From: Oikopleura dioica | Taxonomy: Eukaryota; Animalia; Chordata | Assembly: GCA_907165135.1 (NCBI GenBank) | Contig: OU015568.1 | Location: forward strand, 7,192,001-7,256,000 | Direction: 5' to 3' | Length of the DNA stretch: 64,000 nucleotides | Shown here: positions 1-30,400 of the stretch, piece after piece | How the letters are laid out: each line of letters opens with the position of its first letter | Position numbering within the stretch: position 1 is the first letter of the stretch | Notes under the pieces: model-generated | Told to the model about the DNA's origin: nothing | What the model saw: the letters and a program-made list of their open reading frames with translations, nothing else | Database searches by the model: none | Made by a program: the position numbers and the translations under genes

Positions 1-138
1 AAGGGCCATCTCAGCTCATCTCAGCTCAATCTTGACCTCAGCTCTGCTGGCTCAGCTCAGAAAAAATTTTCAAAAATCTGCAACTCTGCGTGAAACTGAT
101 TTTCTTTTCTTCTCTTTCTTTTTGTTGAACAGGTTTGA

Positions 139-2840: not shown

Positions 2841-3209
2841 AAAATAAATAAAAATTGTATTGAAGAGTTGAAATAAGTCTACTTTTGATTCATCCGCCAT
2901 TTCTGGGGCAAAAAAGATTGGGATCTGAAAATGAGACAGATGAAAGTGCTCACCTGTGCCCAAAAGCGTCGCTGGTGATCGATGGGATTAGTCCAACGGA
3001 ACAAGGATTACGACGAGTAACCGCTTTATCCAGCTCTTCCTTTCAACCATCTTCAATAACTTCAAATTTGTTCCAAGAAACGATGGTCGTCTCTAGAACG
3101 CGAAAATTGTTTTGAACCTCAGAATTTTAAAATAGCAGATCTTCAGTTACGAACGCGCGCCGCGTACCAAAAACGCGTGAAAATAAGTGAGTAGAAGTAT
3201 CCAACAACG

Positions 3210-8541: not shown

Positions 8542-9471
8542 GTCAAGTAAGTCTTCTGAACCTTCCCGTATAAATACTTTTTAGATATGACCATGATGGA
8601 CAAAATACCACCATCAAATTCTTCAAAGACAGAAATGGAACCTTTGAACTGTATCTTTTTTTGAGCTGCAAATGTTTAAAACGAGCGTAAGTCAATATAA
8701 TTGTTCATCATTTGGCAGTAGCCCGTTTTCTGCATTATTATTTTATTATCTGTATTTAGCCATATTTTATTTAATAAAATTATTTATATATTTTCACAAA
8801 CAAATGTCATTTTTCATGAAATTTGGAGAAAGCTGCTTTCTCGTTTAATTTCCTGCTAATGAAAATGTTTGCATATCCGTGAATGCAATCCTTAATCAAG
8901 ATCTAATCCATCTGTGATCCCGGACATGATAACCGGGATCTAACTTCCAGGTACCGCGGTGACTTCTATCGAGGCAACAGCTGATGAAGTTGCTGTCGCG
9001 AGCGAGTTTCCACCATCAGCTGACAGTTTGTACTTCAGCTTAGATTTATGACAAAGAGAGAGAGTCATACCGTTACAATACCTTATTCTTTCTATCCAAG
9101 ATAAAACTCGTCTTCGAAGAGCTAGTGGCAAGAGATTAGCACAGAAGCTTCGAAGAACAAGTAACAACCCTGCGCCGGCTCAAGAATAGCTGTTAGGTGA
9201 GTCAGGACTGTGCGTTATGCAAGGAGGTATCAGAAATAGAAATTTCTGGTCCCGCTAAAGGTGCTAAGTGTTAACTTGCTACCCGCGTCTTAGTACATCT
9301 ATCTGCACACAATGAAGTACTCTTTTTTACAGATCGCATTGCGCTTTTTTTATCGATTTTTAGTTTCTTAGAGATTTTTTTCTACTGACTGATTAGCTTA
9401 GAGAAAGACGCTAAAAGACTGTTTTTTAGACAATACGATATCGACACTGCCCCACAACGGTAAAAAACCAA

Positions 9472-12400
9472 ATGCATAACTCCCCATCCAAGGAGGGAAA
9501 ATGCTACGCTTCTGACGAGCAGCAAGTTGCGCTTGTCGAAGCTACCAACACTGTTTTTGTTGAAGCCGATTCTGCTGCTGCTTTCTCCACTGGGTACGAG
9601 ATGAGCGCGCGATCTGCCAACTCTAACAACAACAATAATGAGGTAATATAAATCCTAATCTGTTCATTTCTGAAAGTTTTTCTAAGGATTCCGAAGACGC
9701 TAAAGCGCCGGAAGCCGCTAAGGTCCCAGCCCCTGTTCCAGAGGCCAAGACCAACACCCTCGCAGAAAAGGCTAAGGCCAAGAAAGCCGGAGCCTCGAGC
9801 GAGACCTCATGGAAAGTCGTCGACAAGGTCATCAAAGAAACCAAATGCACCGTCGACAACCTCAATGTCGGTAAAGACTACATGATCCGAGTCCGGGCTA
9901 TCAACCAGAACGGCGAGGGTATTCCTCGAGAAATTTCCGAACCAGTCAATGCCAAGGCTGTCCTCATCGCTCCCGATGTTGATAAGCGTGGCGTTAGTTC
10001 TTTGGTCTTCTACGGCGAAAAAGATACCGACATTGTCTGCAAATGCTCCGTCACTGGCAAGCCCTTCCCCAACATCAAGTGGTTCAAGGATGATGAGCCA
10101 CTCAGGGAAACCAGCCGAGTCAACTCAGAAGTCCAGAACGGCGTTGCTGTCCTTTCTCTCCGAGAATCCATCGTCGAAGATGCCGGCTCCTACACCCTCA
10201 AACTTACCAACAAAGCTGGCGAAAAGAACGTTCCTGTCAGCGTTGTTGTTTTCGACAAGCCCGGCGACGTCAAAAACTTGACTTACGACAACGTCACCCA
10301 CTCCTCAGTTACCTTGAAATGGGACCCTCCAGCATACACTGGCGGTGTTGCCATCTCCAACTTCATTGTCGAAAAGCGAGATGCTACTTCTACCGTTTGG
10401 TCGACTGTCTCCTCGACTCTTGCTCGACCATCCGTCAATGTCACCAAGCTCTCAACCAATACTGAATATGTTTTCCGCGTTCGCGCTGAGAACAAATTCG
10501 GTAAATCTGGCTGGTGCAACGGCGAAGCCATCATCATCCGATACCCATTCAAGGTAAAAATAATTGCCCAAATTTCCAAAACTAACTGATTTCAAGGCTC
10601 CTTATCCACCAGCAGATGTTTTCACCAAATACATCTCCAAAGAATCCGTCGTCATCGGCTGGAGCGAGCCCGCCAACGATGGTGGTAGCAAAATCACCGG
10701 CTATCACGTCGAATTCAAGTCCCGAAACGCTCTCTTGTGGTCGAAGGCGAACAAAGTTACCTGCGTCGACAAGGAGTTCCGAATCACTGGTCTTGACCAG
10801 GGAATCATCTACGAATTCCGAGTCTGCGCTCAAAATAAAGCTGGAAAGTCCCGAATGTCTCGACCTCTCGAAAACGTCTGCTGCCGAGATCCAGTTGATC
10901 CACCAACTCAAGTCGAAGTTACCTCTGTGACCAAGTCTTCCGTCTCCATCCGATGGAAGAAGCCCGCTTACGATGGTGGATCCAAACTCACTGGATACAA
11001 TGTTGAAAAATCTGACTCCGCTAATGGTCGATTTGTGCGATGCAACTTTGGCAACATCTCCGAGTGCTACTACAAGATCGACGGCCTCAAGGAAGGTGAC
11101 GAAGTTGTCTTCCGAGTTGTTGCCAAAAACGCGATCAACACACTCTCGCGACCATCAGATCCTTCTGCTCCTGTAGTCTGCAAGGATCTTCTCGAATCGC
11201 CTGATATTGAGCACGATGACAGCCTTCGAGACATTCAGGTCATTCGAGCTGGCGAGCCAATTGTCATCAAGGCCGACGCTTATGGCAAGCCCCCACCAAA
11301 GATCCAGTGGAAATGCAACAAGAGCGACATCTTTGCTTCCAACCGCATGTCAATGACTCACGAGAACACCATGTGCATGCTCAAGGTTGAAAACACCACC
11401 CGATCCGACTCTGGAATCTACACTCTTCTCGCCACCAACGATGCTGGCCAGCGAGTCCTCAACGTCGAATACAAAGTTCTCGACAAGCCCGGACCAGTTC
11501 GAAACCTTGAACACAAGATCAAGGATGCCACTCGACTTGAATTGAGCTGGCAGAAGCCTTCTGAAGACGGAAACGGTGACATTAACGGCTACCTCATCGA
11601 AAAGCGAGAAACTTCTCGAGTCACTTGGTCTCAGGTCGCCAGCGGTGTTACTTCTTACTACATCAAGTGCGATCACTTGATCAAGGGCAACGAGTACGTC
11701 TTCCGAGTTCGAGCTGAAAACCGATTCGGTCTTGGCGATCCTCAAGAAACTGTTCCCATTGTCATGAAAAATCCCTACACTATTCCCGGCCCATGCACCA
11801 AGGCTGAAGTTACCCAAATCACAAAGAACTCCGCTGTTCTCGTTTGGGGTCGACCTCAATCTGACGGTGGAAATGCCATCTCCAACTACCAGGTTGAAAA
11901 GCGAGAGAAGCAATCTACTCGATGGTACAAAGCTCACACCAAGAGCTGCAGCGAAACCCGACTCAAGATCACTGGGCTTATTGAGGGCAACCAGTACGAA
12001 TTCCGAGTTTCAGCTGCCAATCTTGAAGGTTTTGGTCCAGCTGGTCCATCCTCTGATATGACTACGATTCGAGATCCTGTCTATCCTCCTGGTGAAGTTC
12101 GATCGCTCAAGGCTATCGATTTCACTAAAGCCTCGGTCACTGTTGGCTGGACTTCTCCAATCTACGACGGCGGCGATGACATCAGCGGCTATCACGTTGA
12201 CATTCTCCCCGTTGGGGCTGAAGACGATGTCTGGCTTACTTGCACTCCCGCTAACGGCGTTCAGGCTACTACTTACCAAATCACTGGCCTCGATGGTGCC
12301 AAAGAGTACAAAGTCCGCGTGCGAGCGATTAACTCTACTGGACCTGGTGAGCCATGCTTGCTCTCTGACTGGGTACAGCCTCATGAGGTGTTGATTGTTC

Positions 12401-15400
12401 CAGAGATCAACGTCGACCCTGAAATTGGACAGTACGTTACTGTCAAGGCGGGATACGCAATCAACCTCAAGGCCTCCGTCAAAGGACGACCTGAACCAAC
12501 TATCAAGTGGACTAAAGAAGGCGCTGTTCCAGAAATCAATGAGCTCGCTTCTCAGGACTTCATCAAGAACGTTGCTTCTCTTTCCATCGCCAACTCCGCT
12601 CGAGAAGACAGTGGCCGATACATTCTTACCGCTGAAAATGCTGGCGGCGAGAAAACTCTTTCCATCACTGTCCGAGTTCAGGATACTCCCGGTGCTCCCG
12701 CTGAATTGAAGGTCAACGAAGTCCGAAAAGAATACGCAAGCTTGAGCTGGGATCTTCCTCTTGTCGATGGAGGCTCCGCGATTTCTGGCTATTTAATCGA
12801 AAAGCGAGAAGCCACTCAAAAAGCTTGGCACACCGTTGCTGACAACTACGAAGGAACCAATATCAAGGTGACCGGTCTCCGAGAAGGTGTCAGCTATTTC
12901 TTCAACGTTCGAGCTATCAACGAATTCGGCCCTGGTCTCGGTTGCGAGACTAAATCTGCTGTCAAGGCATCTGAAGTTCCCGGTATGATTGACTACATCA
13001 ATATTACAGATGTCACCGACAATTCTGTCCGACTCAGCTGGACCAAGCCAATGTACGATGGCGGCTCAAACATCACAGCTTACATCATTGAAGAAAAGAA
13101 GAAGGGCTTCGACACTTGGAGTTTGAGCAAGGAAGTCAAGGGCAACGTTTTGAGCTACAACTTGACTGACATGAACCACAATCAAACTTTCTTCTTCCGA
13201 ATCCGAGCCAAAAACGACGTTGGTGTTGGTGATCCACGAGAGACTAACTCCGTCCTCATCAAGCTCGTCACCAAAGAACCAGACCTAGATACTCGAAAAT
13301 ACTACCGAAACCAAGTATACGTCAAACTCGAGGAAGATGTTGTCATCCGTATTCCAGTCTTTGGTGTTCCAGACCCAGAACTCCAATGGTTCGATGATGA
13401 AGGCAAGCCACTTGCTGAATCTACCAAGATCAACTCTGTCGTCGAGAAGAAAGATGGCCAGATCACTTCTGTCCTGACCATTCTCGAAGCCCAACGAGCT
13501 TACGCTGGCAACTACACGCTCAAGGCTACTAACAGCGCCGGCACCAAATCTGCTCGAATGAGCCTTGTTGTCATGGATCGGCCATCTGAGCCTCTTGGCC
13601 GTGACGATTGCTTTATGGATGTCGAGGCTGAATCTCTCACTCTTGATTGGTCCCCACCAAAGGAAGATGGCGGCGCTCAAGTCACTCACTACGTCGTCAA
13701 CAAGCTTGACAAGACTATGGGTGTCTGGTCCGAAGTCTCTTCTTTCGTGATCCGATCGGGAATTAAGGTCACTCGGCTCCAAGCTGGTCACGAATACAGA
13801 TTCAAGATCCAAGCTGTCAACAAGTACGGTGTTTCTGATCCTATGATCACTCCTGACATCGTTGCCGAGCATCCTTTCTCTAAGCCAATGAAACCAGAGC
13901 AGCCCACTGTTGTCAATGTCACCAACGAGACCTGCACTATCAAGTGGACTAAGCCGAAGGATGGCGGATCTCCTCTTCTCGGTTATCATGTCGAAAAGAA
14001 GGACCGAAATGCTCTCCAGTGGTCTAAGGCCAACAACACAATCATCAAGGAGACTAACTTCAAGAGCGGCAATCTCACTGCTGGACTTTCTTACCAGTTC
14101 CGAGTTTGCGCTGTCAACGCTGCTGGTTCCTCTAAATGGTCCAAAGAAACCGCTGAAGTCATCTGCCGAGATCCAGTTGAAGCGCCAAGAAATCTTGAAG
14201 CCATCCGAACTCGAGCGAAATTCATCAAACTCGCATGGAAACGACCCGAATACGACGGTGGTTCTAAAATTACTGGCTACACTGTTGAGTACAGAAACTG
14301 CAATGAAGAAGGATCTCGATTCACCAAGGCCAATTTCAACAAAGTTATCGAAACCGACTTTGTCATCGATACTTTGAACCCCGGTGACAGCTACGAATAC
14401 CGAGTTTGCGCTCTCAATGCTGCCGGTTCAGTTTCTGGCTGGTCCCAAGTTCTCGGCCCTGTTCTTGCTCACGATGAAATGGAAGCACCAGAAATCGAAA
14501 TCGATCCTTTGGCTCTCGCTGGTGTCAAGGGCAAAGCCAACGACACAATCAAAATTTACGCTGGAATCACTGGCAAGCCAAGACCATCCGTCCAGTGGTT
14601 CAAGAATGGAGAAGAAATGGTTTCTACTCTCAAGACTGAGATTAAAACTGACGATTATGGCTCCACTCTCATCATTTCTGATGCAAACCGATACGACACT
14701 GCTGATTACGAAGTCAAGGCTACTTCTATTGCTGGTCACCGATCTCAATACGTCAGTGTTCACATCAAGGACTCTCCTGGCCCCGTCGAGGGAAATATCG
14801 CAGTCTCTGGTGTTACCTCCACCAAGTGTCTTTTGAGCTACACCCCTCCCAAGAACACTGGTGGCGCTAAAATCACTGGATTCCGAGTTGAAAAGCGAGA
14901 AACTTCTCGACTCAGCTGGCTCGTTGTTCATGACTGCGCTCCTGAGACCTGCGTCAAGATTGCATCCCTTTCTAAGGGCAACGAATACATGTTCCGAGTC
15001 GCCGCTTGCAACCAGCACGGAATTGGTCCTTATGTTGAGTCTGAGACCGTGATTGCCAAGGATCCATTCACCAAGCCTTCCGAGCCTGGAATTCCATCCG
15101 TCGACAACATTCTTTCCGACTCTTGCACTTTGAGCTGGTGCCGACCCGTTCAGAGTGGTGGCGCTGACATTCAGGGCTACATTCTTGAGCGAAGAAAGAA
15201 GGGTGCTACTCGATGGATGCGAGTTCGAAGATCTAACCGACGTGATCGAAAACAATCTCGAGTCTCTCTTGCTGATGATTCTATCATCGAAGATCTTCGA
15301 CTTCGAGTCACCGTTGAGGCTGACTCCGAGCAAGAATTCCGAGTTTACGCTGTCAACAAGGCTGGTGTTTCTGAACCTTCTAGCACTACTGGCTTGATTC

Positions 15401-18400
15401 GATTCCAGGATCCCCTTTACGTTCCAGATGCTTGTGGCCAGGCCCGCATGATCGACCAAACTGCTACGTCCGTCACTCTCAAATGGACCAAGCCACTTCA
15501 CGATGGCGGCGCTGATGTTAACGGCTATGCTGTTGAATTCATGGAATACGACGCCGACGATGCCGCAGCTGAAGGCTACGACGAAGAGGAACTTTGGAAG
15601 ACCGCCATTGATGCTAAACGACTTCGAAACACCGAAGCTACTGTCACTGGTCTTGAGCGAGTTCCTTACAAATTCCGAATCCGAGCTTCCAACATTGTCG
15701 GTTTGAGCAAGCCTACCATGGTTACTGATGATATTATGAACACTCTTATCGTCACTCCTACTGATATTCCCGAAGAGCCATCTTTCGGCGAATGCGCTGA
15801 AGTCGGACGAACTCTGATTCTCCGATCAATGATGCCTGTCCGAGTTCGACTTCCATTTTTCGGTCGACCCGCTCCTTCTGTTAAATGGCAAGTCAAGGGT
15901 GTCTCTGATGAAGAATTTTCTCCATTGGAAGACTCTCGAATCATGGTCGACAGCACTGAAACCACCTCCACCATCGTCATTGAAAAACTCGACCTCGATA
16001 TGACCGGCCGATATCAAGCTGTCATTGAAAACAGCAGCGGCACTGCATCTGCTGGTTTCATGATCAAGGTTCTTGACGCTCCTTCCGAGCCAGCTGATCT
16101 TATGGTCGCTGGCGTTGGCCGCGACTGGGTCAAGATTGCCTGGAAATCTCCTCTCAACGAAGGTGGATCCCGAATCCTCGGCTACACTGTTGAAAAGCGA
16201 GATGCCACAAAGAAAGCCTGGACTACCATGGCTACCAAGCTCCAGAAGAACGACTACAAATTCGAGAATCTTGTTGAAGGCTCTCGATACTTCTTCCGAG
16301 TCTTGGCAGAAAACGAATACGGAAATGGTCGACCCGCTGCTACCGATGCACCAGTCATCACTGCTGAAGGCCCTACTGCTCCAGCCTACATTTCTACTGG
16401 CAAAGTTACTGCTGCTTCTGTCCAGATCACCTGGGGCAAGCCCGACTTTAACGGAGGTTCTGACATTACCAGCTATGTCATCTCTGTCCAGAAGAAAGGA
16501 AGCGACAAATACGTGGAATGTGGCAAGACCAAGGGCAACCAGCTCGAGTTCACCTACAAAGAAGTCAGTGAAGGCCACAGCTACCGATTCCGCGTTCACG
16601 CCACCAACGATGTTGGACCTGGTGACTACGCCGAGTCTAAGGGTATTGTCGCTGCTGATCAGACTATGGCTCCAACTGCTCAGCTTGACGGTATGCGATC
16701 CAAACTCCTCGTCGGAAAGGCCGAATCTACCATTGTTGGTAACATTCCAATTGCTGGTATGCCTCTTCCAGTCATTTCCTGGCAGAAGGATGGCGAGAAA
16801 TTCGCTGAAACTTCTCGATGCAACACTGAATACCACAACGGCGTCGCTACGATCACAATTCGAGATGCTGTCCTCGCTGACTCTGGCGATTACAAGATGA
16901 CTCTTCAAAATAAGGTCGGAACTATCCACGTTCCTGTCCTTGTGCGAGTTCAGGACCGACCTTCACCAATCCGAGGCCCAATTCAGTTCCTCGATATTAC
17001 CCACGATTCTCTTGCTATGAAGTGGGAAGTCCCAGAGTACGATGGTGGCTCTGCTGTCAACAACTACATCGTTGACATGCGCGAACTTGAGGAGAAAGCT
17101 GAGTGGGTCACTCTTTCTCAGAACAATGCTCGATGCATGTTCAAGGTGAACAAGCTCAAGCGAGGTGCTGAATACCAATTCCGAGTTACTGCTGAAAACA
17201 GATTCGGACGATCTGAACCCGTCATTTCCGCAGCTGTCGTTGCTGAATACGACTTCCGAGTTCCTGGTACTCCCGGTCAGCCCACTATTGCTGCCTGCGC
17301 TGGTGAATTCATGACTCTTCGATGGACCGCTCCCGCTTCCGACGGAGGATCGCCAATCACTGGCTACTTCGTCGAACGAAAAGATCGAAACTCGCTCCTC
17401 TGGCAGCGATGCAACTACGGCAACCTTTCCGCCAATGCTCACGAGTACAAGTGTGGTGGTCTTGAACGAGGACTTCAGTATCAGTTCCGAGTTACTGCTT
17501 TGAACAAAGCCGGCGTCGGTCGACCATCAAAGCCTTCCGATTCCGAATACGCTCGAGATATCATCGATCCTCCAACCAATCTTGAAGTCACTTCTGTTGG
17601 CCGAGACTACGCTACCCTCAAGTGGAACAAGCCAGAATACGACGGTGGTGCCAAGATTACTGGCTACATTGTCGAGCGAAAGGACCGCGAAAAGGGATCT
17701 GCCTGGCTCCGATGCAATTTTAGCAACGTTAGTGAGTGTTTCTACACCGTTTCCGGTTTGATTGAATCACACGAATATCTCTTCCGAGTCTACGTCAAGA
17801 ATGCTGCTAACTCTGTCTCGGCTCATTGCGAGATCCGAGACTTCGTCACCTGCGAAGACAGCTCTGTTCCTCCAAACGTCGACATGGACGCTAAATTCGC
17901 TGCCGAGCAAATCATCCGTGCTGGTGATGATCTTTACGTCGAAGGTATCATCAGAGGATCGCCTGCTCCAGTCATCGAATGGATGTTCAATAAGGAGCGA
18001 ATCACCAGCAACCAGCGAATCACCATTACTACTGATGACTTGAAGACTTCGATCAAAATTCTCGGCGCTAACAAGTTCGACACTGGTACCTTCAGCGTCA
18101 AATGCCAGAACTTCGTCGGCCAGAGAATTGTCGATGTTAAGGTTCGAGTCCTTGATACTCCTGGTCCTTGCAAGAAAGTCTCCGTCAGCAACGTCTACGC
18201 CGACCGAGCTCTTGTCTCTTGGGAGAAACCAGAACAGGATGGCAACCAAAACGTAACTTCTTACACTCTTGAGAAGCGCGAAACTAGCCATCTTTCCTGG
18301 GTTATGGTTGCTTCTGGAATCGACTGCCTTTCGTACAAGGCTACTCATCTCCTCGAAGGCAACGAATATGTCTTCCGAGTTCGAGCTGAAAACAAGTCAG

Positions 18401-21400
18401 GCCTAGGTGATGCTTGCGAATCCGAAGAAGTCCTCGCTGTCAACCCATTCGTTAAGCCCGAAAAACCAGGTCGACCAGAAATCCGAGCTGTTACCAAACA
18501 GTCCGTTTCTCTTGGCTGGGCTCGACCAGTTAGCGATGGTGGTTCCCCAATCACTGGCTTCTGGATCGAAAAGAAACAGCGCCAGTCGGTCCGATGGGTC
18601 AAGGCAACCAAGAAGCCATCCAACGATCTTTGCGACAAGGCTGCTAATCTGACTGAAGGTCAGCAGTATGAGTTCCGAATTGTTGCAATCAACGCCGCTG
18701 GTATGTCTGAGCCCGGTGACGCTTGCGCTCCAGTTCTGATTGAAGATCCTCGATATGCGCCTGAAGCTTCCAAGAAGCTCAAGTGCATCGATTCTTCTGA
18801 GTCGTCTATCACTTTGAAGTGGAGCGAGCCTATCTTTGATGGCGGCGCTTTGATTGAAGGCTACGTCATTGAATATCTCATCTGCAAGGAAGAAGATCCA
18901 GTCTGGGTGAAATGCTCTGGCTCTTCTCTCGTTCAGGAAACCACTTACACCGTCGGTGGTCTTGAAGCCAATGCCATGTACAAATTCCGAGTCGCTGCCG
19001 TCAATCGAATCGGCACTGGTGATTTCAAGGAAGGCGAAGAGGCTTACCAAGCTCTTGAGCGACTCGAAAAGCCAACCATCGAAGTTGCTGATGAGCTTTG
19101 CAAGACAATCAATGTCCGAAAGGGAGGTTCTTTTACTCTTTCCGCAACATTCACTGGCCGACCTTCTCCTGATATTGAGTGGAACTTTGCCGAGCAGACT
19201 TCCAACACTCACTGCAAGGATCGAGGTCTTTTGACCATCCAAGGCAAGAAAACTTCTCTTCTGATTGAAGATGCTACTCGTGACGATTCTGGCCGATATG
19301 AGCTCGTCGCTACCAATGGTTCTGGCAAAACTATCCAAGGCTTCAAAATTCGAGTTATGGACACTCCCGGCCCTGTTGAAGATCTTATCGTTCTTGAATG
19401 CACCAAGGAATTCGTCCTCCTCGATTGGGAAGCTCCCAAAAATGAAGGTGGCTCTTTCGTCACTGAATACATTGTCCAGAAGAAGGAAGTTTCCCGAAAA
19501 TCTTGGACCACTGTTCCAAGTGAAGGCGACCGAACCTCTTGCAAGATCACCAACCTTGTTCAAGGCGAGACCTACTCTTTCCGAGTTATTCCCGTCAACT
19601 GCTACGGTGACGGTGTTGCTCGAGAGTACAATGGCATTGTTCGACTTTCCGAACGACCTGGTCCAGTTGGCCGAATCGAAGTTACTGACACTACCAAGGA
19701 TTCCATCTCCATTAGCTGGCCCAAACCAGACTTCAACGGTGGCGCCGACATTCTCGGATACAACATTGAGTACTCTCTTGCCGGTTTTGACAAATGGGTC
19801 AAACACGATCAGAATGTTACTCAATGCCAGGTTACTTTGAAGAAACTCGAAACTGGACGAAAGTACCTTATCCGAGTCTCTGCCCGAAATGAAAAGGGTA
19901 ACTCCGACCCAGTTCAGACTCGATTCCCAGTTGAAGCTAATGACATTGTCATTGAGCCAACTGTTGATATGAAGTCTTTCTCTGCCGGTGGACTTATGCG
20001 ACGAGAAGGTGAAATCATCACCATCAAGGTTCCAGTCGCTGGAAAGCCATTCCCAAAAGTCAAGTGGATGAAGGACGACGAGCCAGTCGAAATCACTAGC
20101 CGAGTTCAGCCAACTCTTGAGGGAGGTGTTGCTACTTTGAAAATCGAAGAGTCCAAGCGGGCTGATACCGCCAAATACTCGATCGTCGCAACTAACGACG
20201 GTGGAAGCGCTACTGGTCACGTTCGACTCAACGTGGTTACTAAGCCAACCAAAATTGAGAAGATCGAAGTCGTCGACGTCAATGAGTCCAGTGTTTCACT
20301 CAAGTGGACTGTTCCAGAAGACGATGGCGGAGCAACTGTGAACAACTATGTTCTTCAGATGCTCGAGCCTGATGCGGATGGTTACGTTGAGTGCGCTTCA
20401 ACAATTGTCCGACCTCACTACAAGGTCAAGAAACTCAAACTCAACAAGGACTACCGATTCCGAGTTGCTGCTGAAAACCGAATGGGTCTCTCCGAATGGT
20501 TGAACTCTGAGCTTGTTACCGTCAAGTTCCAGTTCCGAGTTCCACGACCACCAGAGGATGTTCGAATTCGACAAATCAACATCGACACTGCTTTTGTTGA
20601 GTGGGATGCTCCTTCTACTGATGGCGGAAGCCCAATTTTGGGATATCATGTTGAGGTCAAGGACCGAAACTCGCTCCAATACCGCGTTGCCAACCGTGGC
20701 ATCTGCAGAGAGCGAAAGCTCAAGGTCACTGGTCTCCAGGCCGGACTTGAGTACACTTTCCGCGTCGCTGCCGAAAACTTGGCTGGTCGATCACCAATGT
20801 CGAAGGAATGCGAGCCTAAGGTCGCCCGAGATCAATGCACTCCACCACTCAACATTCGACCTCTTCGAACTGACCGATCTTCAGTCACCATTCAGTGGGA
20901 CCGACCCGAGTACGATGGTGGTTCTAAGATTGCTGGATACACTGTCGAGCGAAGAGAGCTCCCAGAAGGCCGATGGATGAAGTGCAACTTTGCCAACGTC
21001 ACCGATTTCGTTTACACCATCACTGGACTCACTGAAGATTTGGCTTACGAATTCCGAGTTATTGCTCGAAACGCAGCTGGATCAATTTCTGAACCATCTG
21101 AGCCATCTGTGGGTATCCTCGTTGTCGAATCCCTTGTTGCTCCTTCTATCGATCTTGATCGATCTTTGAAGGACACCATGGTCGTCCGACAGGGTGACAC
21201 TATCAAGATTGGTGCTGATATCCAGGGTAAGCCTTGGCCATCCATTGACTGGAAATATGAAGGCCAGGTTATTGAATCTGGAAAGAAATACGCCATTGAA
21301 AATGTCAACAACCGAACTATCCTCATCGTCAAAGACCTTGACCGAGACGATACTGGTCTCTACGAGCTTGAACTTGGAAATTGTGTCGGCAACAAGTACG

Positions 21401-24400
21401 CTTCGATCAAGCTTCGAGTTCAGGACACTCCCGGCCCTCCTGTTGGTCCTCTCAACATTAGCTCTGTCTACGCTGATCGAGTCACTCTTACATGGAACCA
21501 GCCATCAAATGATGGTAACTCCTTGGTCAACAACTACATCGTTGAACGACGAGAAACTTCCAAGATCAGCTGGACTGTTATTGGCCCTGCTGTCAAGACT
21601 CTTGCTTTCCGAGCTACTGGTTTGAGCAGCGAAGCTGAGTACATCTTCCGAGTCCGAGCTGAAAACCGATTCGGTATTGGTCAGCCTCTCGAGTCTGCTG
21701 CAGTTGAGCCTAAGAACCCCTTCACTGTTCCTGGCCAATCTGGTCGACCAACCGTCTCCAACATCACAAAGTCTGGATGTATGCTCACCTGGAATGGTCC
21801 AAAGAGTGACGGTGGCCGAGAAATCAAGGGCTACCACGTCGAGAAGAAATTCCGAGAATCCACCAAATGGTTCCGAGTTACTCGAAAACTTTGCCAGACC
21901 AAGGGCTACCGAGTCCAAAATCTCATCGAAGGCCGAGAGTACGAGTTCCGAGTCATTGCTGAGAACCCTGCTGGTCTTGGTCAGGCTTCTGAAGGCTCAC
22001 AGGCTGCTTTGATCTGCGATCCTACTTACCCACCTGGAATTGTCACATTGCCCAAGGTTACCGATACCACCAAGAACAGCATCTCCATCAACTGGCAGAA
22101 GGTCAGCTACGATGGCGGCGCTCAGGTCAGTGCTTACCACGTTGAGTACTGCGAAGTTCCCGAAGATGAAGGAGCTGAAGAGGTTTGGATGCCAGCTACT
22201 CCACCAAAGGGTATTACTGAACAAGCTACTGTCATCACCGAGCTCGAATCTACCAAAAAGTACAAAATTCGAGTTTGTGCTGCAAACATCAACGGCTGCT
22301 CTGATTGGAAGGAGCTTCCAGCTTCTTGCCAGCCAACTGACCGACACAGTGCTCCTGAACTTCACCCTGACTCTGACTGGAAGAACTCCTTGATTGTCAA
22401 GGCTGGTCAGCGATTTGTCCTTTTCGCTAAGGCTAAAGGTCGACCAACTCCATACATGAGAGTTACTCGTGGAGAAGAGTCTGTTCCCGAAGGAATCAGT
22501 ATTGAAGAAAAGGATGATCGACTTACTATGTTGACTGCTGAGGCTACTCGATGGCACTCTGGAAACTACACTCTCCATCTTGAGAACCAGGTCAAATCTG
22601 TGAAGATTCCATTCCAGATTCGAGTCATGGATACTCCCGGCCCTATTCAAGATCTCAAGGTGACTGAAGTCACCAAAGACGCGATCACTCTTGCTTGGGA
22701 GAAGCCCACTAATGATGGCTCTTCTCACATCACCAACTACGTCGTTGAAAAGCGAGAGACTGATCGAAAGGCCTGGACAACTGTTACCGACAACCAAGGT
22801 CGATGCACCATCAAGATCGATACTTTTGCTGGCGTTCGATACAATTTCCGAATCTGTGCTGAAAACGATCAGGGTCGCGGTGTTATGGTCGAAACGCCCA
22901 AGGCTATCCTTGCCACTGAAGTTCCTCAGCAGCCCGAGCCAATTCACCTTCTCGATGTCACTCGAGATTCTATCACTATCCGATGGGCTCGACCTCTTTG
23001 CGACGGTGGAAGCAAAATCACTGGATATGATGTTGAAACTCGAGACAAGGATAAGTCCGCTTGGGTTAAGCGAGTTCACACTCGAGAGCTCGAAGCTCGA
23101 GTTCCAGGTCTTACTGAAAACGTCCAAGTCGCCGTTCGTGTCGTCGCTCTAAACCACGCTGGTCGATCTGCTCCACGAGAATATTACCAGATGATTTTGG
23201 TCAAGGATACCCAGGAAGCTCCTTCTGCTGATCTCCGAAACTTGGCTGGAAACACAGTCAGCATCAAGGCCGGAAACAACCTTAAACTTTCTGTTCCGAT
23301 GTCTGGCCGACCAGTTCCCAAATACACCTGGTACAAGGGACGAGATGCCACCAACATCATGAAGCCATCTCAGCGAGTTACCGTCAACCACGACGATAAC
23401 AAGATCGCTTACCTTGGAATCAACAATGTCTACCAAGAAGACGCTGATACTTACGTTCTTCATATGAAATCTGCTGCCGGTGAGACTAAGGTCAACGTTA
23501 ACATCAACGTTTTGGACGTTCCAGCCATGATCCGAGATCTCAAGACCCGAGAAGTCAGCAGCAACTACGTTGTTCTTGCTTGGACTCCACCAGCTTTCGA
23601 CGGTGGCTCTTCCATCGCCGGCTACCATGTTCACTACCGAACAACTGGCTCATCTGAATGGATCGAGTTCTCAACAACTGTTGTCCGAACTGTTCTCAAG
23701 ATTGGTGGTCTCAAGAACGGCGAAGAGTACACTTTCCGAATCAAGGCTGCCAATCGATTCGGTCCTGGTCCATCTGTTATGACCACTCCTGTGACTTGCC
23801 GACTTGGCTTCGTTGCTCCTGGCGCACCAGCTGCTCCAGAAGTTGTCAGCGTTTCCAAAGAATGCATCACAATCAAGTGGGCTTACCCAACCAAGGACGG
23901 TGGACACACTGTTGACGGTTACGACGTCGAAGTCAAGGACAAGAACTCGATCATGTGGCGAAAGCAAAACATGACTGTCATCCGAAAGCGTGAATTCCGA
24001 TGTGCTAATCTTACTGCTGCCTTGGAATATGAGTTCCGAGTTATTGCTATCAACCCTGCTGGCAAATCTCGACCATCTGCTGCTTCTGATCCAGTTGCTG
24101 CTCTTGATCCCGTTGATCCACCAGAGAAGGTTCTCGTCACTGATATCACCAAATCTACTGTCAGCCTTATGTGGGCTCCTCCACGATACGATGGTGGCGC
24201 TCGAATCATTGGTTACCTCGCTGAAAAGCAGGAAATCTCCGCTGACGGCGTTGAAGGCCGATGGACAAAGGCTTGCTTCACTCTCATTGCCGAGAACAAC
24301 TACACTATCCAGGGTCTTGAAGAGGACACTCTTTATCGATTCCGAATCATCGCTAAGAACTCCGCTGGTGTTTTCTCTGACGCTTCCATCCCATGTGAAG

Positions 24401-27400
24401 AAGTCAAGACTCAGGATCTTTACACTCCTCCTCTTCTTACTCCAGACCAGCATCTCTTCAAGGAAGTCCGCGTCGCTGCTGGCACTGAACTTCGACTTCA
24501 CATTGGCGTGAGCGGCAAGCCCGAGCCAAGCATGGACTGGGAAGTTAACGAAAAAGACATCGTTTCTGAGCCAGATCGAATTATTGAGCGAAACGCAACT
24601 GGAACTACCATTGTCATCAAGGACACTTCTCGACTTCACACTGGTCGATACCGATTCAGCGCTCGAAATGCGCTCGGTGAACGACATCACGATTTCCGAG
24701 TTCACATTATGGATCGACCCGACAAGCCAACTGGTCCAATTAAATTCTTGAAGATTTCGGCTTCCAAGATTCAGTTCCGATGGGCTGGACCAAAGAATGA
24801 CGGCGGTGCTCGACTTATGGGTTACGCTGTCTTCAAGCGAGAAACTACTCGAGTTTGCTGGACTCCACTTACTCAGTGCTCTGAGACTCTTACTTGGACT
24901 GCTGACAAGCTTCTCCCTGGAAATGAGTACCAGTTCCGAGTTCAGGCCGTGAACAAGTTTGGCGTCGGTGAAGGACTTGATTCAATTCCATGCGTTGCCG
25001 AGAACAAATTTACTGTTCCAATGAAGCCCGGCCGACCTGGCATTCAAAATGTCACTGCAACCTCGTGCTCTCTTGCTTGGGCGCGACCAGAATATGATGG
25101 AGGATCTGAAATCTCCGGCTACTGGGTTGAGAAGAAGGATTACCGATCCACTCACTGGTTCAAGTGCCACAAGCGAATCTGCCGAGATATGCGATTTGCT
25201 GTCAAGAACTTGATCAAGGGCAAACAATACGAGTTCCGAGTCCTTGCTGAAAACGCTGCCGGTTTCTCTGAGTATTCTGCTCTTTCTGAAATCATCACCG
25301 CCGTTGATGCCGTCAACCCACCAGGACCAGTCATGAACCCCAAGGTTCGAGACACTACTGCTTCTACCATCACTGTTGGCTGGAACAAGCCAAACTACGA
25401 TTCTGGATCAGAAATCACCGGATACGTTGTTGAAGCGCTCGAAGAATGCACTGACGATTGGGTTGTCATTGCCGAAACCGCCGAAACCAAGGCTAAATTC
25501 GAGGTCAAGCGAGACACTGCTTACATGATCCGAGTTTACGCTGAAAACGACGGTGGTCTCTCCAAGCCCGTTCAGCTTCCCAACATTGTTCGACCAATGG
25601 AAAAGCTTGAGAAGCCAGAATACGATCTTGACGCTGCTCTCCGAAAGACTGTCATTGTCAAGGCTGGCTCTCACGTTGGACTCAACATTCCAATCAAGGG
25701 CCGACCATTGCCCAACGTGCGATGGGAATACAATGGCGTTGACGCTAACGCTTACGATCGATGCCTCGTTGAGGTCGTTGAGGGCGAGATGAACAGCTAC
25801 ACCAAGCTCACAATCTCCGATGTTAACCGAGACGATACTGGCAAGTGGCACCTTCACCTTGAAAATGCTGCTGGCAAGGCCGCTACTTTCGTCAATCTCA
25901 AGGTTCTTGACACTCCCGGCCCCATCGGAAACCTCCAGGTCCGACGAGTCACCAAGGAGAACTGCATGATCTCTTGGGACATTCCAAAGAACGAGGGTGG
26001 CACCGAAGTCATCTCATACACTCTTGAGAAGCGAGAATCTACTCACCGAGCCTTTACTACTGTCATTGCTGACTGCCTCGACTTGAACTACAATTACAAG
26101 AATCTCCGAACTGGATCGTCTTACTACTTCCGAGTTTCTGCCAACAACGCTGAAGGTATCGGTATTTCTACTGATACTGAGCTTGTCACAATTACTGAAA
26201 CTCCCGGCGCTGTTCGAAACCTTCAGGTTGTCGACACTACCGACAGCGCAATCAAGGTCCGATGGGAGCGCCCAGAAGACGATGGCGGTACCCCAGTCAT
26301 GAGCTACAAGGTCAGCTACGCCGAGATCGTCGCTGGTAAAGAAACTTACTACGACTTTGATGTTCGACATGCTGAGGCTGAGATCAAGGATCTCGACAAG
26401 GGTCGACCATATGAAATCCTCGTCTGGGCTCGAAACGAAGCCGGTCTCGGTCTCCGAGAAAGATCGGTCCAGTTGTCTGCCAGGAACTTCTTATTCCACC
26501 AGCACTTGATCTTTCTGCTATCATTGGCCGACAGGTCAACTGCCGAGTCGGTGCTCAGATTCGACTTGACTTGCCAGTCACTGGTAAACCCAGACCAACC
26601 ATGGCGTGGACCAAGGACCGAATCCCCATCAAGCGCGATGACGGAATCAACATCGAATATGGCAAGGACCAGGTTACCCTTATGTGGGGCGAAGTAACCA
26701 AAGCACACGCTGGTCAGTACTACTGCAAGCTTGACTCAAAGGCTGGCATGGTTGAATCTTCCTTCATTTTGAACGTCTTTGGTGTTCCTGGCAAGGTTCA
26801 CGGTCCAATTGAATTCATCGACGTTGATGCTACTGAGGTTCATCTTGATTGGGAAATCCCAGAAGATACTGGTGGATCCGAAATCACTGGCTACGTCATT
26901 GAGCAGAAGATCTCTACCATGGACAAGTTCAAGATGGTTACTGCTTCTTGCTCTCGATCTCAGTTCCGAGTCAAGAAACTCGAAGAAAAGCAGGAATACG
27001 TTTTCCGAATCGCCGCCGAGAACAAGTACGGTGTTGGTCCATGGCTCGAATCCGTTCCAGTCACTCCACGATCGAAGTACCGACGACCCACTCCACCAAG
27101 CACTCCCGAGTTCTACGATGTTGCTGCTACTACCATGACTATGATCTGGAATGCACCTCAGTCTAACGGTGGAACTGAACTCCTTGGCTACTACCTTGAG
27201 AAGCGAGAACGAAACGCGATTCTCTGGACTAAGGTTAACACTCGACCAATCAAGGATCCTGAACACAAGGTCACCGGTCTTCTTGAAGGTCTTGAGTACC
27301 AGTTCCGAGTCTACGCCGAGAACAAGGTCGGCTTCTCTGCTGTCTCCGATCCATCCAAATTCCAGCGAGCCTTTGATCAGGTTTCTGAGCCTCAGGATCT

Positions 27401-30400
27401 CGAAGTTGTCGACATCAACCGAGACTCGGTCTCTCTTCGATGGAAGGAACCAAAATTCAACGGCGGTGCCAACATTACCTCCTACAACGTTGAGAAGCGA
27501 TCTGGTCTTGACAACCGATGGTACAGAGCTAACTTCGCCTCTATCACCGAGTGCGAATACACTGTTACTGCTCTTACTCCTGGAGAAGAGTACGAGTTCC
27601 GAATCACTGCTCGAAACGCTCTTGGAACCATGTCTCGACCATCTCAGCCAACTAACAAGGTTGTTCCCCACGATGAATTCATCCAGCCTCAGATTCTCTT
27701 CGATCGAGAACTTTTGGATGGTGTTTTCACTCGATCAGGCAAGACCATTGTTCTCAAGGCTCAGGTTGTTGGTAAGCCTACTCCACGAGTCTGGTGGACT
27801 AGAGACGATGCCGAGCTCATTCCTTCGCCCAACATGGATATTGAATCCGACAACAAGGGTAACCATACCTTGACCATCAAGGAAGCTCGACGACAGGACA
27901 GCGGCAAATATGAGCTCTTCGCCAAGAATCCTTGCGCTCTTCGATCTTATGATATCGATGTCCGAGTTCAGGATCGACCTGGTGCACCAAAGGGCCCCAT
28001 TAAATTCACTTCCGTCTCTGGCGAAAAGATGACTCTCTGGTGGGAAATGCCACAGGATGATGGAGGAGCAGCAGTTGAGAAGTTCCTTGTTGAACGACGT
28101 GAGACTTCTCGAACTACCTGGAACATCGTTGATGCCAATGTTAGCTGCTGCAATTTGACCGTCATTCGATTGCTCAAGAACCACGAATATCAGTTCCGAG
28201 TCTTCGGTATCAACAAGTTTGGCATTGGTACTCCACTTCACTCCGATCCAATCATCGCCCGCTACCAGTTCAACGTTCCTGGCAAATCTGGTGCTCCTAC
28301 TCGAGCTAACTCGTCTAAGGACTCAATCACCATTATGTGGGCTCGACCTCAGTCTGATGGTGGCAATGACATCAAGGGTTACCACGTTGAACGACGAGAA
28401 AAGCGATCTCTCCGATGGGTCCGATGCTCTAAAGACCTTGTTTCTGAGCTCAGATACAAAATCACCAACCTCACTGAAGGTAACTGGTATGAGTTCCGAG
28501 TTACTGCTGAAAACAACGCTGGTCCTGGTGAGTCTTCTGATGCCGGTCCATTGATCGAGTGCCGAGAGCCAGTCAACACTCCTGGCGTTCCTGGCGTTGT
28601 CCGAGTCATCGATACTACTCGAACAACCGTCGCTATTGCCTGGTCCCCACCAACTTTCGATGGCGGTTCTGCTGTTACTGGATACAATGTCTACACCAAG
28701 CAGCTCCAGCCACCATCAATTGACAAGGAGCAGCAGGCTGAGGCTGAAGAAGCAGAAGAAGAAGTTGAATTTGCCCGAATGAACATTGAAGCCGTCAAGG
28801 CTTGCAACTGGATCATTCCTGGTCTCACTCCTGGTCAGGAGTACCTTGTCCGTGTTGCTGCTGTCAACGTCGCTGGCGAAGGCCACCATGTCCAAATGAC
28901 CGGCCGCGTTACTGCTGTTGATCGACTAGAGAAGCCCGATTTCGTCATTGGCGCCGACTTCAGATCCAACTACATCGTTCGAGCTGGCAAGCCTCTTCAT
29001 GTTTCTCTCCAGTACTACGGTCGACCTCTTCCTACAGTCACTTGGTCCAAGCCTAACTGTGATCTTGAAGACCGAGCTGAGATCCGAACTACTGACTGGA
29101 ACTCTGAATTGACTATTCCATCAACTGAGCGAAACGACTCTGGAAAATACACCATCACTCTCGAATCTGGTGCTGGTATGAAGGAGCTCAACTTGAACAT
29201 CAAGATTCTCGACACCCCAGGCGCTTGCTCAGAGATTCAGGTGACCAAGGTCACTCGAGAATCCTGCTCTCTTCAGTGGCTTCCACCAACCATCGACGGC
29301 GGTGCTTTCGTCAAGTCTTATGTTGTCCAGAAGCGAGAAGTTTCTCGACGATCTTGGCAGACTGTTACTAGAAACTGCCAGCGACCTGCTTACACCGTCA
29401 GTGACCTCGAGCCAGGAAGCAACTGGTGCTTCCGAGTTCTCGCCGAAAACGAATTCGGTATTGGTGAGCCACACGAGCTTTCTCGATCTGTCATTATGAC
29501 CGAACTTCCATCTTCTCCAGACAAAGCGTCTGTTACCAACGTCACTTCCAGCTCTATCAGCATTCGATGGACTGCTCCAATGTCCAACGGAGGTTCTCGA
29601 ATCTCTTATTACCTCATCGAATCGCACAAGAAGGGTGAAAAGAAGCCTGACGGCCTTGACTTCTGGGTTGAAGTCGCCAAGGTCCGAGGATCCATCTACG
29701 AGTACACTGTCTCTGGTCTCACTAAGGGCTGCGAGTACCTTGTTCGAGTTCGAGCTATCAACGAATCTGGTGTTGGTCCAGAGCGAGACGCTTTCCCATC
29801 GGTTGTCTGTGAAGATGAAGCCATTGCTCCCGAAGCTGATCTCAAGCGACTGTACAACAAGACTCTCACAATCCGAGCTGAACAGAACGCAATCATCGAA
29901 ATTCCATTCATTGGCTCTCCTAAGCCAAAGATCACCTTCTTCAAGGGCGAGAATAAGGAGCGAAAGCTCTTCTCTGAAGGCAAATATCTTATTACTATCA
30001 CTGATAAGGTTGCTACTCTTCGAATCAGCTCTACTGAGAAGAAGGATTCTGACACTTATTACATCCGACTTGAAAATTGCAATGGAATCGTTGAGAACAA
30101 GTTCTACGTTAACATCTTCGACGTTCCTGGACCAGTTTCTGGACCAATCACTTTCACTGATGTCTCTGCTGATGGTATGACCGTCAACTGGGGACTTCCT
30201 GAAGAGAAGGGCGGTGCTGAAATCAACGGTTACTCGATTGAATACCGCGAGTACGGCCGAACTACTTGGACTCAACTTACAAGCTGCACAACCCGAAGCT
30301 ACTTCAAGGTCCGAAAGCTTGTCCGATACACTGAGTACCAGTTCCGAGTTCGAGCTGAAAACCGATTCGGCTTTGGTGACGCTATTGTTTCTGATCCATG

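What the first reader, a model, noticed from the sequence alone, without database searches (positions are those of the whole stretch)
8900..9960. Headless titin: the gene seems to begin with unique sequence fused to half an Fn3 domain, with no Z-disc, I-band or D-zone
The first titin-like sequence (exon 9687-10553) starts DSEDAKAPEAAKVPAPVPEAK...ASSETSWKVVDKVIKETKCTVDNLNVGKDYMIRVRAINQNGEG. That is only the C'-G half of the Fn3 at position 3 of a C-zone super-repeat; strands A-C are missing. It is joined by a clean 44-nt GT-AG intron to an open frame of non-Ig, non-Fn sequence (9430-9642, ...GYEMSARSANSNNNNNE; ATGs at 9472 and 9601). Only ~1 kb separates this from the SLC9C stop, and no Ig/Fn exon is visible there or further left. 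Three readings are possible: (a) an autonomous ~1.2 MDa A/M-band-only titin, analogous to the vertebrate internal-promoter Cronos isoform; (b) a titin split into two loci by rearrangement; (c) a long intron that nests the SLC9C and CNG genes. Options (a) and (b) would mean a striated muscle whose titin does not span Z-disc to M-line in one chain.
Basis: partly seen in the sequence, partly recalled or inferred. Interest (0 to 1): 0.8.

Follow-up and report, generated by a model that had tools for sequence, protein, structure and literature searches.

The report
Split titin's tail gene starts mid-domain
In the tunicate Oikopleura dioica the last 11,000 residues of the giant muscle protein titin come from a separate gene that starts halfway through a protein domain, and its start cassette is shared with a second titin piece, so this animal's titin is probably several chains, not one.

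Summary
A 33-kb, almost intron-free gene (9430-42605, + strand) encodes about 11,015 residues:
- a 57-residue unique leader and a 41-residue charged linker;
- only the C'-G half of an Fn3 domain;
- 87 Ig/Fn3 domains in unbroken C-zone register;
- a kinase and M-band Ig domains.

RNA covers exon 1, and reads confirm removal of the 44-nt intron. No RNA and no Ig/Fn3 coding lies upstream. Independent wild contigs rule out misassembly.

Related lineages (dS about 1) keep the same start, and the half domain is invariant in them.

New here: a second titin gene also starts with a C'-G half Fn3 and carries the same 5' cassette. The cassette has paired CAGCTG boxes, a 200-nt ultra-conserved block, an invariant 5' leader and a homologous first exon.

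Reading (b), a titin split into separate loci, is supported. Reading (a) is right about the autonomous start only. Reading (c) is not supported.

The scan had already noted a split titin piece 1.45 Mb away (s1-322892).

Still open: whether the half domains dock, whether the mRNAs are trans-spliced, and whether the 5' end is a transcription start or a spliced-leader acceptor.

The parts
8978..9022 (.). Pair of CAGCTG E-boxes (8978-8983 and 9017-9022), a candidate muscle-type (MyoD-class) promoter or enhancer element
   Evidence: One search gives the positions. One search shows both boxes, 37-45 bp apart, at -147 to -199 from the block in every gene-C lineage (L001-L009) and upstream of the paralogous gene (L014). 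The function is inferred, not tested.
9117..9329 (+). Ultra-conserved non-coding block. It holds CCGGCTCAAGAAT (9175-9187), a 5' splice-site-like AG|GTGAGT (boundary 9196|9197), an Sm-site-like AAATTTCTGG (9240-9249), a hairpin (9260-9283) and a T-run (9322-9328)
   Evidence: The block is 92-96% identical to L001 with no gaps, while flanks and introns are near-unalignable and coding dS is about 1. Its core is shared with the paralogue L014. There is no Rfam match, a fold z-score of +0.2 and no RNA reads on it. Its nature is unresolved.
9330..9429 (+). Unconserved spacer ending in a T-rich tract and YAG
   Evidence: The sequence is not conserved, but T-rich plus (T/C)AG immediately before 9430 is present in all lineages and in the paralogue.
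9430..9642 (+). Exon 1: 5' leader (9430-9471, starting with an invariant 22-mer), ATG at 9472 and 57 codons of unique, probably disordered peptide. It holds a conserved RNA hairpin at 9508-9542
   Evidence: RNA contigs cover 9433-9638. Conservation starts exactly at 9430. dS is 0.13 against about 1 elsewhere, and dN/dS is 0.46. All indels between lineages and paralogues are multiples of 3. Fold z-scores are -1.8 and -3.2. AF2 gives mean pLDDT 54 and no secondary structure. There is no Pfam match.
9643..9686 (+). Intron 1, 44 nt, GT-AG
   Evidence: Three RNA reads in X23 run from 9642/9643 into a sequence identical to the L001-type start of exon 2. The intron is not conserved between lineages.
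9687..9809 (+). Start of exon 2: 41-residue Lys/Ala/Pro/Glu-rich linker
   Evidence: It is 86% identical between lineages, with dN/dS 0.2. AF2 gives pLDDT below 50 for residues 1-22. It shows no detectable similarity to Fn3 strands A-C.
9795..9941 (+). C'-G half of an Fn3 domain, at super-repeat position 3 by register
   Evidence: Profile positions 36-76 of 77 match at E 7e-11. It is 46/46 residues identical to L001 with pS 0.5 and invariant in all lineages. AF2 pLDDT is 68-83, against 90-95 for the complete domains that follow.
9942..10553 (+). Rest of exon 2: one complete Ig (I-set) domain and one complete Fn3 domain
   Evidence: Pfam gives I-set at 1.2e-16 and fn3 at 3.1e-23.
10554..10596 (+). 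Intron 2, 43 nt, GT-AG
   Evidence: Read from the sequence. The frame continues, and the same structure is present in L001.
10597..42605 (+). Body of the gene: the rest of about 8 C-zone super-repeats, then Ig-Ig-Fn-Fn-Ig-Ig-Fn, a protein kinase (about 37827-38591), M-band Ig domains and stop TAA at 42603-42605. There is a one-base frame change near 26479-26484
   Evidence: Pkinase scores 5.5e-61. The best relatives are Ciona savignyi titin fragments at 42% identity.

Best explanation
This is the C-terminal piece ('gene C') of an Oikopleura dioica titin that is encoded by separate genes.

It is a self-contained transcription unit.
- A conserved upstream region holds paired CAGCTG boxes and a 200-nt ultra-conserved block.
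- It is followed by a first exon (9430-9642) that supplies the 5' leader, the ATG at 9472 and a 57-residue disordered peptide.
- After a 44-nt intron come a 41-residue charged linker and the C'-G half of the Fn3 at super-repeat position 3.
- Then follow about 8 C-zone super-repeats, the kinase and the M-band region.
- The product is about 11,015 residues, roughly 1.2 MDa.

The same 5' cassette heads a second titin gene ('gene B'), which likewise begins with a C'-G half Fn3. So the cassette is what turned internal titin exons into independent genes, and it probably keeps them co-expressed in muscle.

Shown here:
- the gene structure and transcription of exon 1;
- the exon 1-exon 2 splice;
- conservation of the start across lineages;
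- the shared cassette;
- strong purifying selection on the half domain.

Inferred:
- The pieces stay separate polypeptides lined up on the thick filament.
- The invariant half Fn3 is completed non-covalently by the A-B-C half that the scan's notes place at the C-terminus of gene B. I put this docking at about 40%.
- The unusual nucleotide-level conservation of the leader reflects an RNA-level role.
For: Gene model and domains.

RNA:
- Contigs cover exon 1 from 9433.
- Three reads join exon 1 to exon 2.
- No run shows RNA on 7600-9432.

Assembly is sound:
- Contigs of another individual tile the region.
- Tara Oceans contigs L028 and L029 span 8716-10282 at 98% identity.
- L001-L010 are collinear from the upstream gene into titin.

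Conservation:
- It starts exactly at 9430.
- The half Fn3 is 46/46 identical with pS 0.5 and invariant in all lineages.

Paralogous start cassette:
- Second leader type: P0132-P0134.
- L014 and L016 carry leader, linker, C'-G half Fn3 (E 1e-8), then Fn3-Fn3-Fn3-Ig-Fn3-Fn3.
- The second form is seen in DNA of the window's own species and in 11 RNA reads.
- The block core and the paired E-boxes are shared.

Other points:
- No Ig/Fn3 lies upstream in the window.
- Other titin pieces are noted 1.18-1.48 Mb away.
Against: - The complementary A-B-C half and the identity of gene B with the noted A-band fragment rest on unchecked scan notes. I could not fetch that locus.
- No read reaches the true 5' end, so a transcription start and a spliced-leader acceptor at 9430 are not distinguished.
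- The two same-species RNA runs gave only 25 reads, all from other lineages or the paralogue. Exon 2 onward had no raw reads, so chimeric B-C mRNAs could not have been seen.
- A frame change near 26480 is unexplained. If it is real, the protein would be cut in two.
- The half Fn3 is not significantly more conserved than full domains: 6% of 46-residue windows are also invariant.
Confidence: 0.68

Rival explanations
1. The pieces are separate genes, but one continuous titin mRNA is rebuilt by trans-splicing. The donor after the A-B-C half exon of gene B would join the acceptor at 9687 (or 9430). The nucleotide-conserved cassette (U1-site-like GTGAGT, Sm-like site, invariant leader) would act as the pairing or recruiting element.
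For: - The halves are said to be complementary (notes).
- Exon 2 starts in phase 0.
- Exon 1 and the block are conserved at nucleotide rather than protein level: dS 0.13 and 92-96% identity.
- O. dioica has an active trans-splicing machinery (PMC6883708).
- A conserved intronic U1-binding motif promotes genic trans-splicing in Drosophila mod(mdg4) (PMC4387717, abstract).
Against: - Exon 1 is cis-spliced to exon 2, and its frame is kept by in-frame indels only.
- A joined domain would carry a 41-residue insert in gene C, and about 50 residues in gene B, in the C-C' loop.
- No chimeric read was seen, though depth was too low to count as a test.
- In mod(mdg4) the element lies on the donor RNA, not on the acceptor RNA.
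Confidence: 0.12
2. The first domain is complete in cis. Exon 1 and/or the 41-residue linker would be degenerate strands A-C, so nothing is missing and no partner is needed.
For: - The linker has the same length (41 residues) as the missing half.
- AF2, given paralogous full domains as its alignment, draws a strand at linker residues 26-33.
- The leader has three hydrophobic stretches and a TGYEM motif that recalls strand C.
Against: - hhalign of the leaders against the Fn3 profile gives probability 0.3%.
- A profile of the Fn3 N-terminal half gives no score for the leaders.
- A position-3-specific N-half profile scores the linker at -3.3 bits, and 47% of shuffles do as well.
- AF2 predicts the leader as disordered, pLDDT 54.
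- The AF2 strand may simply reflect the alignment it was given.
Confidence: 0.06
3. The real first exons lie left of the window, and a long intron nests the two ion-channel-type genes.
For: 9430 is preceded by a conserved T-rich tract and YAG, like a 3' splice site.
Against: - No RNA lies on 7600-9432.
- No Ig/Fn3 lies in window 1-9690.
- The same YAG-plus-22-mer start sits at the head of the paralogue, with a different upstream region.
- Promoter-like conserved elements lie just upstream.
- The other titin pieces are noted beyond the opposite end of the window.
Confidence: 0.03
4. The apparent start is an assembly error or a strain-specific rearrangement.
For: A frame change near 26480 shows that the assembly may carry small errors.
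Against: - Contigs of another individual tile 7600-11600.
- Two Tara Oceans contigs span 8716-10282 at 98% identity.
- At least three further lineages keep the same order and structure.
Confidence: 0.02

Closest known systems
Vertebrate and ascidian titin (connectin): A-band C-zone, titin kinase and M-band region
   Same: - The 11-domain Ig/Fn3 super-repeat is in unbroken register.
- An Ig-Ig-Fn-Fn-Ig-Ig-Fn run precedes a protein kinase.
- M-band Ig domains with inserts follow.
- The best sequence matches are Ciona savignyi and vertebrate titin at 38-42% identity.
   Different: - The gene holds no Z-disc, I-band or D-zone part.
- It has about 8 rather than 11 C-zone super-repeats.
- It starts inside an Fn3 domain behind a unique leader.
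- It has only two small introns in the first 17 kb.
Cronos, the internal-promoter isoform of vertebrate titin (PMC4720518)
   Same: A unique first exon is spliced onto internal titin exons, giving an A-band-to-M-band protein that is made independently of the Z-disc end.
   Different: - Cronos starts inside one continuous TTN gene that also makes full-length titin.
- Here the upstream DNA is two unrelated genes.
- The start cuts a domain in half.
- The start cassette is duplicated at a second titin gene.
Invertebrate division of titin functions between separate genes (sallimus/kettin with projectin; TTN-1 with twitchin)
   Same: I-band and A-band functions are carried by separate giant Ig/Fn3 polypeptides.
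   Different: Those are old paralogues with whole domains at their ends (from general knowledge, not tested here). Here a chordate-type titin appears cut secondarily, within its C-zone and within domains.
Donor-strand complementation in chaperone-usher pili; split-domain reconstitution
   Same: A subunit with an incomplete beta-sandwich could be completed by strands from the next subunit. That would give a non-covalent end-to-end joint.
   Different: This is analogy only. The partner half was not examined here, and no such joint is known in sarcomeric proteins.
Spliced-leader RNA and Sm-class snRNA genes
   Same: The block combines a 5' splice-site-like GTGAGT that can pair with an upstream GGCTCA, an Sm-site-like AAATTTCTGG, a 3' hairpin and a T-run.
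   Different: - It has no Rfam match.
- It does not resemble the known 40-nt O. dioica leader (PMC6883708).
- Its folding energy is not unusual.
- It shows only one compensatory pair.
- No RNA was seen on it.

Membership tests
Titin / connectin (chordate type) | A-band C-zone built of 11-domain super-repeats Ig-Fn-Fn-Ig-Fn-Fn-Fn-Ig-Fn-Fn-Fn | tested here: met
   87 consecutive domains are in register. There are 7 full repeats plus one that starts at half of position 3.
Titin / connectin (chordate type) | Ser/Thr kinase domain near the C-terminus, preceded by Ig-Ig-Fn3 and followed by M-band Ig domains | tested here: met
   Pkinase scores E 5.5e-61 at 37827-38591.
Titin / connectin (chordate type) | One polypeptide spanning Z-disc to M-line (Z-repeats, I-band tandem Ig/PEVK and D-zone in the same gene) | tested here: not met
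   No Ig/Fn3 lies upstream in the window. The gene starts at 9430-9472. Whether the mRNAs are joined in trans was not testable.
Titin / connectin (chordate type) | Closest sequence relatives are titins | tested here: met
   The top hits are Ciona savignyi titin fragments and vertebrate giant-exon products at 38-42% identity. Twitchin and projectin score lower, at 29-33%.
Cronos-type internal-promoter titin isoform | Unique first exon spliced to internal titin exons | tested here: met
   Exon 1 has no Pfam match and only lineage or paralogue relatives. The splice to exon 2 is seen in reads.
Cronos-type internal-promoter titin isoform | The promoter lies inside a continuous titin gene that also yields the full-length protein | tested here: not met
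   The upstream neighbours are a + strand gene with a weak cNMP-binding match and a - strand ion-transport gene. No titin exons are there.
SL trans-spliced mRNA of O. dioica | mRNA 5' end at a YAG acceptor, carrying the 40-nt leader ACTCATCCC...TCTAACAG | tested here: inconclusive
   A conserved T-rich tract plus YAG precedes 9430. No read carried leader letters, but only about 5 reads reached the end. Muscle genes are under-represented among trans-spliced genes (PMC6883708).
Sm-class snRNA / SL RNA gene (for the block 9117-9329) | Match to a curated RNA family, or covariation-supported structure plus expression as a small RNA | tested here: inconclusive
   There is no Rfam hit at E up to 1. 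One compensatory pair out of 28. The fold z-score is +0.2. No reads were seen, but the libraries were poly(A)-primed or low-depth.
Split-domain (strand-complementation) joint | An incomplete fold on one chain kept under purifying selection | tested here: met
   The half Fn3 is invariant across lineages with pS 0.5.
Split-domain (strand-complementation) joint | Matching complementary strands on the partner chain, and physical association | not testable with these tools
   The partner C-terminus is known only from scan notes s1-322892 and s1-322977. Its sequence could not be fetched.

The most novel reading that the evidence does not exclude
Oikopleura builds its thick-filament titin from separate polypeptides that are clasped end to end. 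One Fn3 domain would be reconstituted from an A-B-C half on one chain and a C'-G half on the next. Each downstream gene would have been made independent by a duplicated, nucleotide-conserved start cassette. The cassette's U1-site/Sm-like block and structured leader may also coordinate the pieces at the RNA level.
Probability: 0.3. Interest if true: 0.9.

Novelty: new variant of a known kind. Interest (0 to 1): 0.72.

Why it matters
Titin is the textbook single-molecule ruler and spring that spans half a sarcomere. A chordate whose titin is cut inside the C-zone, through a domain, bears on three open questions.
- Does the A-band ruler need covalent continuity?
- How do giant genes break up in a genome known for extreme scrambling?
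- Can a beta-sandwich domain work as a natural inter-chain clasp?

The shared start cassette gives a concrete mechanism for turning internal exons into genes: first a reusable promoter-plus-leader module, then physical separation. It also gives a handle for experiments in a tractable animal. It is a natural counterpart to the vertebrate Cronos isoform, which matters for reading titin truncation disease.

Tried and rejected
- **Protein word searches.** The giant exon found only distant titins, with no Oikopleura entries. Exon 2 found nothing. Orthologues came from metagenome contigs instead.
- **phmmer of exon 1.** It also hit two bacterial repeat proteins with a VYVDxDSxKAMSTGFAVSGRRAAKDG motif. 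I judged this chance or low-complexity similarity.
- **Leader exon as degenerate Fn3 strands A-C.** Rejected.
- **41-residue linker as decayed strands A-C.** Rejected.
- **Split intein or other protein splicing.** Considered from the sequence only. No intein motifs are present and the leader is not conserved at HN|S, so I dropped it.
- **Block as a known RNA family.** No Rfam hit.
- **Block as an unusually stable structure.** No.
- **Copies of the block or exon 1 elsewhere in the window.** None.
- **Long complementarity between the block and downstream sequence.** Nothing beyond chance.
- **Viral-contig scans.** The spliced leader gave nothing. The block core gave only chance hits in phage genes.
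- **Contig L011.** It seemed to show a different upstream neighbour (Sybindin). It has coverage of about 1 and shares only 55 nt upstream with L012.
- **Chimeric contigs.** I treat L011, L012 and L015 as chimeric assemblies across stretches shared by the two paralogues.
- **Ganot et al. 2004.** The paper could not be read.
Full report
**What is there.**
The window behaves like the compact genome of Oikopleura dioica. Earlier notes of this scan name the Okinawa genome.

On the + strand, a gene runs from 9430 to the stop at 42603-42605.
- Exon 1 is 9430-9642.
- A 44-nt GT-AG intron follows (9643-9686).
- Exon 2 is 9687-10553.
- A 43-nt intron follows (10554-10596).
- Then come two huge open frames, which meet at a one-base frame change near 26479-26484.

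Joined, they give about 11,015 residues. I built Fn3 and Ig profiles from the gene itself. The parse is as follows.
- 93 unique residues.
- A partial Fn3: residues 94-134 match profile positions 36-76 of 77, E 7e-11.
- Ig-Fn-Fn-Fn-Ig-Fn-Fn-Fn.
- Seven full Ig-Fn-Fn-Ig-Fn-Fn-Fn-Ig-Fn-Fn-Fn super-repeats.
- Ig-Ig-Fn-Fn-Ig-Ig-Fn.
- A 420-residue gap that holds a protein kinase (Pkinase E 5.5e-61).
- M-band-like Ig domains.

Eighty-seven domains are in unbroken register, which puts the partial domain at super-repeat position 3. The best relatives in a 5.8-billion-protein search are Ciona savignyi and vertebrate titin at 38-42% identity.

**Is the start real?**
No Fn3 or Ig is detectable in any frame of window 1-9690 (best E 0.24 among 1,278 frames).

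- Contigs of a marine metatranscriptome, 99% identical to the window, cover 9433-9535 and 9506-9638, plus three stretches further into the gene.
- Two RNA runs labelled with the same species gave only 25 reads, all 90-99% alike. That means they come from other lineages or from a paralogue.
- Three of those reads run from the end of exon 1 into a sequence identical to the exon 2 start of contig L001. So the 44-nt intron is removed.
- No RNA run put anything on 7600-9432.
- DNA contigs of another individual tile 7600-11600.

Two Tara Oceans contigs of the window's own lineage span 8716-10282 at 98% identity. A further set of wild contigs (L001-L010) is collinear from the upstream gene into titin. 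Misassembly is excluded.

**Comparison across lineages.**
L001 differs from the window by dS of about 1.0-1.5 in the titin body, with dN/dS about 0.04. It keeps the same exon 1, intron, exon 2, intron, exon 3 structure. Conservation along the alignment is very uneven.
- The intergenic DNA after the upstream stop is poorly alignable.
- An island at 8842-9100 is moderately conserved.
- A block at 9117-9316 is 92-96% identical without a gap.
- 9317-9429 is not conserved.
- Identity then jumps exactly at 9430 and stays at 88-100% through exon 1.
- The intron is not conserved.

The half Fn3 is 46 of 46 residues identical with half of its synonymous sites changed. It is invariant in every lineage recovered. 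It is thus at least as constrained as complete domains: 6% of 46-residue windows are equally invariant. It is not a decaying remnant.

Exon 1 behaves differently. Its dS is only 0.13 and its dN/dS is 0.46, so it is held at the nucleotide level. Yet all indels seen (33, 9 and 6 nt) keep the frame. AF2 predicts the peptide as disordered (pLDDT 54). The RNA has conserved hairpins (z -1.8 and -3.2).

**A second gene with the same start.**
A search with the exon 1 peptide found the same leader in several wild lineages, and also a second leader type: MHYSPSKEGKCYASDEQQVALVEAS...NSNQQ.

Contigs L014 and L016 carry this second leader. In them the order is:
- the same YAG, followed by the invariant 22-mer ACAATACGATATCGACACTGCC;
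- the leader exon;
- a small intron;
- an acidic linker;
- another C'-G half Fn3 (profile positions 47-77, E 1e-8);
- then Fn3-Fn3-Fn3-Ig-Fn3-Fn3.

The end of this second leader (TCCAACCAACAG|GT) and its DGSRLTARD segment explain two oddities.
- A second DNA form appeared at diploid-level depth in an individual of the window's species.
- Eleven RNA reads ran on unlike the window after 9551.

So the paralogue exists in this species and is expressed. Upstream of it lie the same block core and the same pair of CAGCTG boxes at the same distance.

Two titin genes that both begin in the C-C' region of an Fn3 therefore share one 5' cassette. The scan's earlier notes describe an A-band titin fragment 1.45 Mb away that starts and ends with half Fn3 domains, with a C-terminus of strands A-B-C only. 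They also describe I-band-like pieces at 1.18-1.20 Mb. Gene B of my contigs is most simply the head of that fragment. I could not fetch that locus, so this link and the complementarity of the halves are leads, not results.

**What the 5' end is.**
Three models remain.
1. A transcription start at about 9428-9433. The sequence TYAGACA resembles an initiator, the RNA contig starts at 9433, and muscle genes are rarely trans-spliced in this animal (PMC6883708).
2. A spliced-leader acceptor. A T-rich tract plus YAG is kept in all lineages and in the paralogue, although the sequence around it is free to vary.
3. A short non-coding exon ending at the GTGAGT of the block (boundary 9196|9197).

The third model is disfavoured, because no RNA lies on the block although it would map in all lineages. 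With about five reads reaching the end, the first two cannot be separated.

**The block.**
It is the strangest element here.
- A GTGAGT can pair with an upstream GGCTCA.
- It has an Sm-site-like AAATTTCTGG, a hairpin and a T-run.
- All of these are shared by both paralogues, while the parts between them differ.

That is the layout of a spliced-leader or Sm-class RNA. However, it has no Rfam match, no unusual stability, one compensatory pair and no reads. It may equally be a densely packed promoter. The paired CAGCTG boxes and a TATA-like CAAGATAAA would fit a start near 9125.

**How it most likely works.**
A-band titin is laid along the thick filament and bears little stretch, so it can plausibly be made in pieces.
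- The cassette supplies a promoter, a leader and a start codon to what were internal exons.
- Its duplication at two genes would give matched expression.
- The invariant half Fn3 argues that the cut domain still has a job.
- The simplest job is to be completed by the missing strands on the preceding chain.

I tested the alternative that the missing strands are supplied in cis by the leader or by the 41-residue linker, and found no support. One caveat: AF2, fed with paralogous full domains, drew a strand in the linker. Rebuilding one mRNA by trans-splicing remains possible and was not testable with the reads available.

**Verdict.**
Option (c) and misassembly are not supported.

No paper in the held library describes a split titin in Oikopleura. 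PMC5888912 simply counts one titin orthologue.

Noticed in passing
window 26479-26484: The titin frame shifts by one base (frame 1 to frame 3) between an Fn3 and the next Ig, with no room for an intron. The linker length matches the other repeats only if one base is added or removed. It is either an indel error of the assembly or a real frameshift that would cut the protein in two.
   Followed up: partly
window 9117-9329; also L001 3660-3875 and L014 about 500-714: A 200-nt non-coding block is more conserved than the neighbouring coding sequence. It has a 5' splice-site-like GTGAGT, an Sm-site-like AAATTTCTGG, a hairpin and a T-run. Exactly two copies are present in the genome of run X2, one per titin piece. 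There is no Rfam match and no RNA was seen.
   Followed up: partly
window 9545-9551: The window's lineage lacks 33 nt (11 codons, ..DGSGFTARDAVP..) of exon 1 that all other lineages and the paralogue have. The deletion is confirmed in two independent Tara Oceans contigs (L028, L029).
   Followed up: yes
L011, L012, L015: Short, low-coverage metagenome contigs switch between the two paralogous titin heads, or to an unrelated Sybindin gene, at stretches that the paralogues share. They are probably assembly chimeras, and a caution for anyone using such contigs for synteny.
   Followed up: partly
L014 1482-3358: The paralogous titin piece starts half-Fn3, Fn3, Fn3, Fn3, Ig, Fn3, Fn3. This Fn3-rich pattern differs from the C-zone and would fit the beginning of the A-band.
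   Followed up: partly
window 9687-9809: The charged linker before the half Fn3 is 41 residues long, the same length as the missing strands A-C in the seven sister domains. It ends in AKKAG where they have KKKG. No statistical similarity was found.
   Followed up: yes
window 9508-9542: A 35-nt hairpin inside the first 25 codons of exon 1 is invariant at every base in all lineages and in the paralogue. It may be an RNA control element near the start codon.
   Followed up: partly
P0122, P0123 (not in the window): Two bacterial surface-type proteins carry 6-7 repeats of a motif that resembles part of the titin leader (42% identity over 26 residues). Probably coincidence.
   Followed up: no
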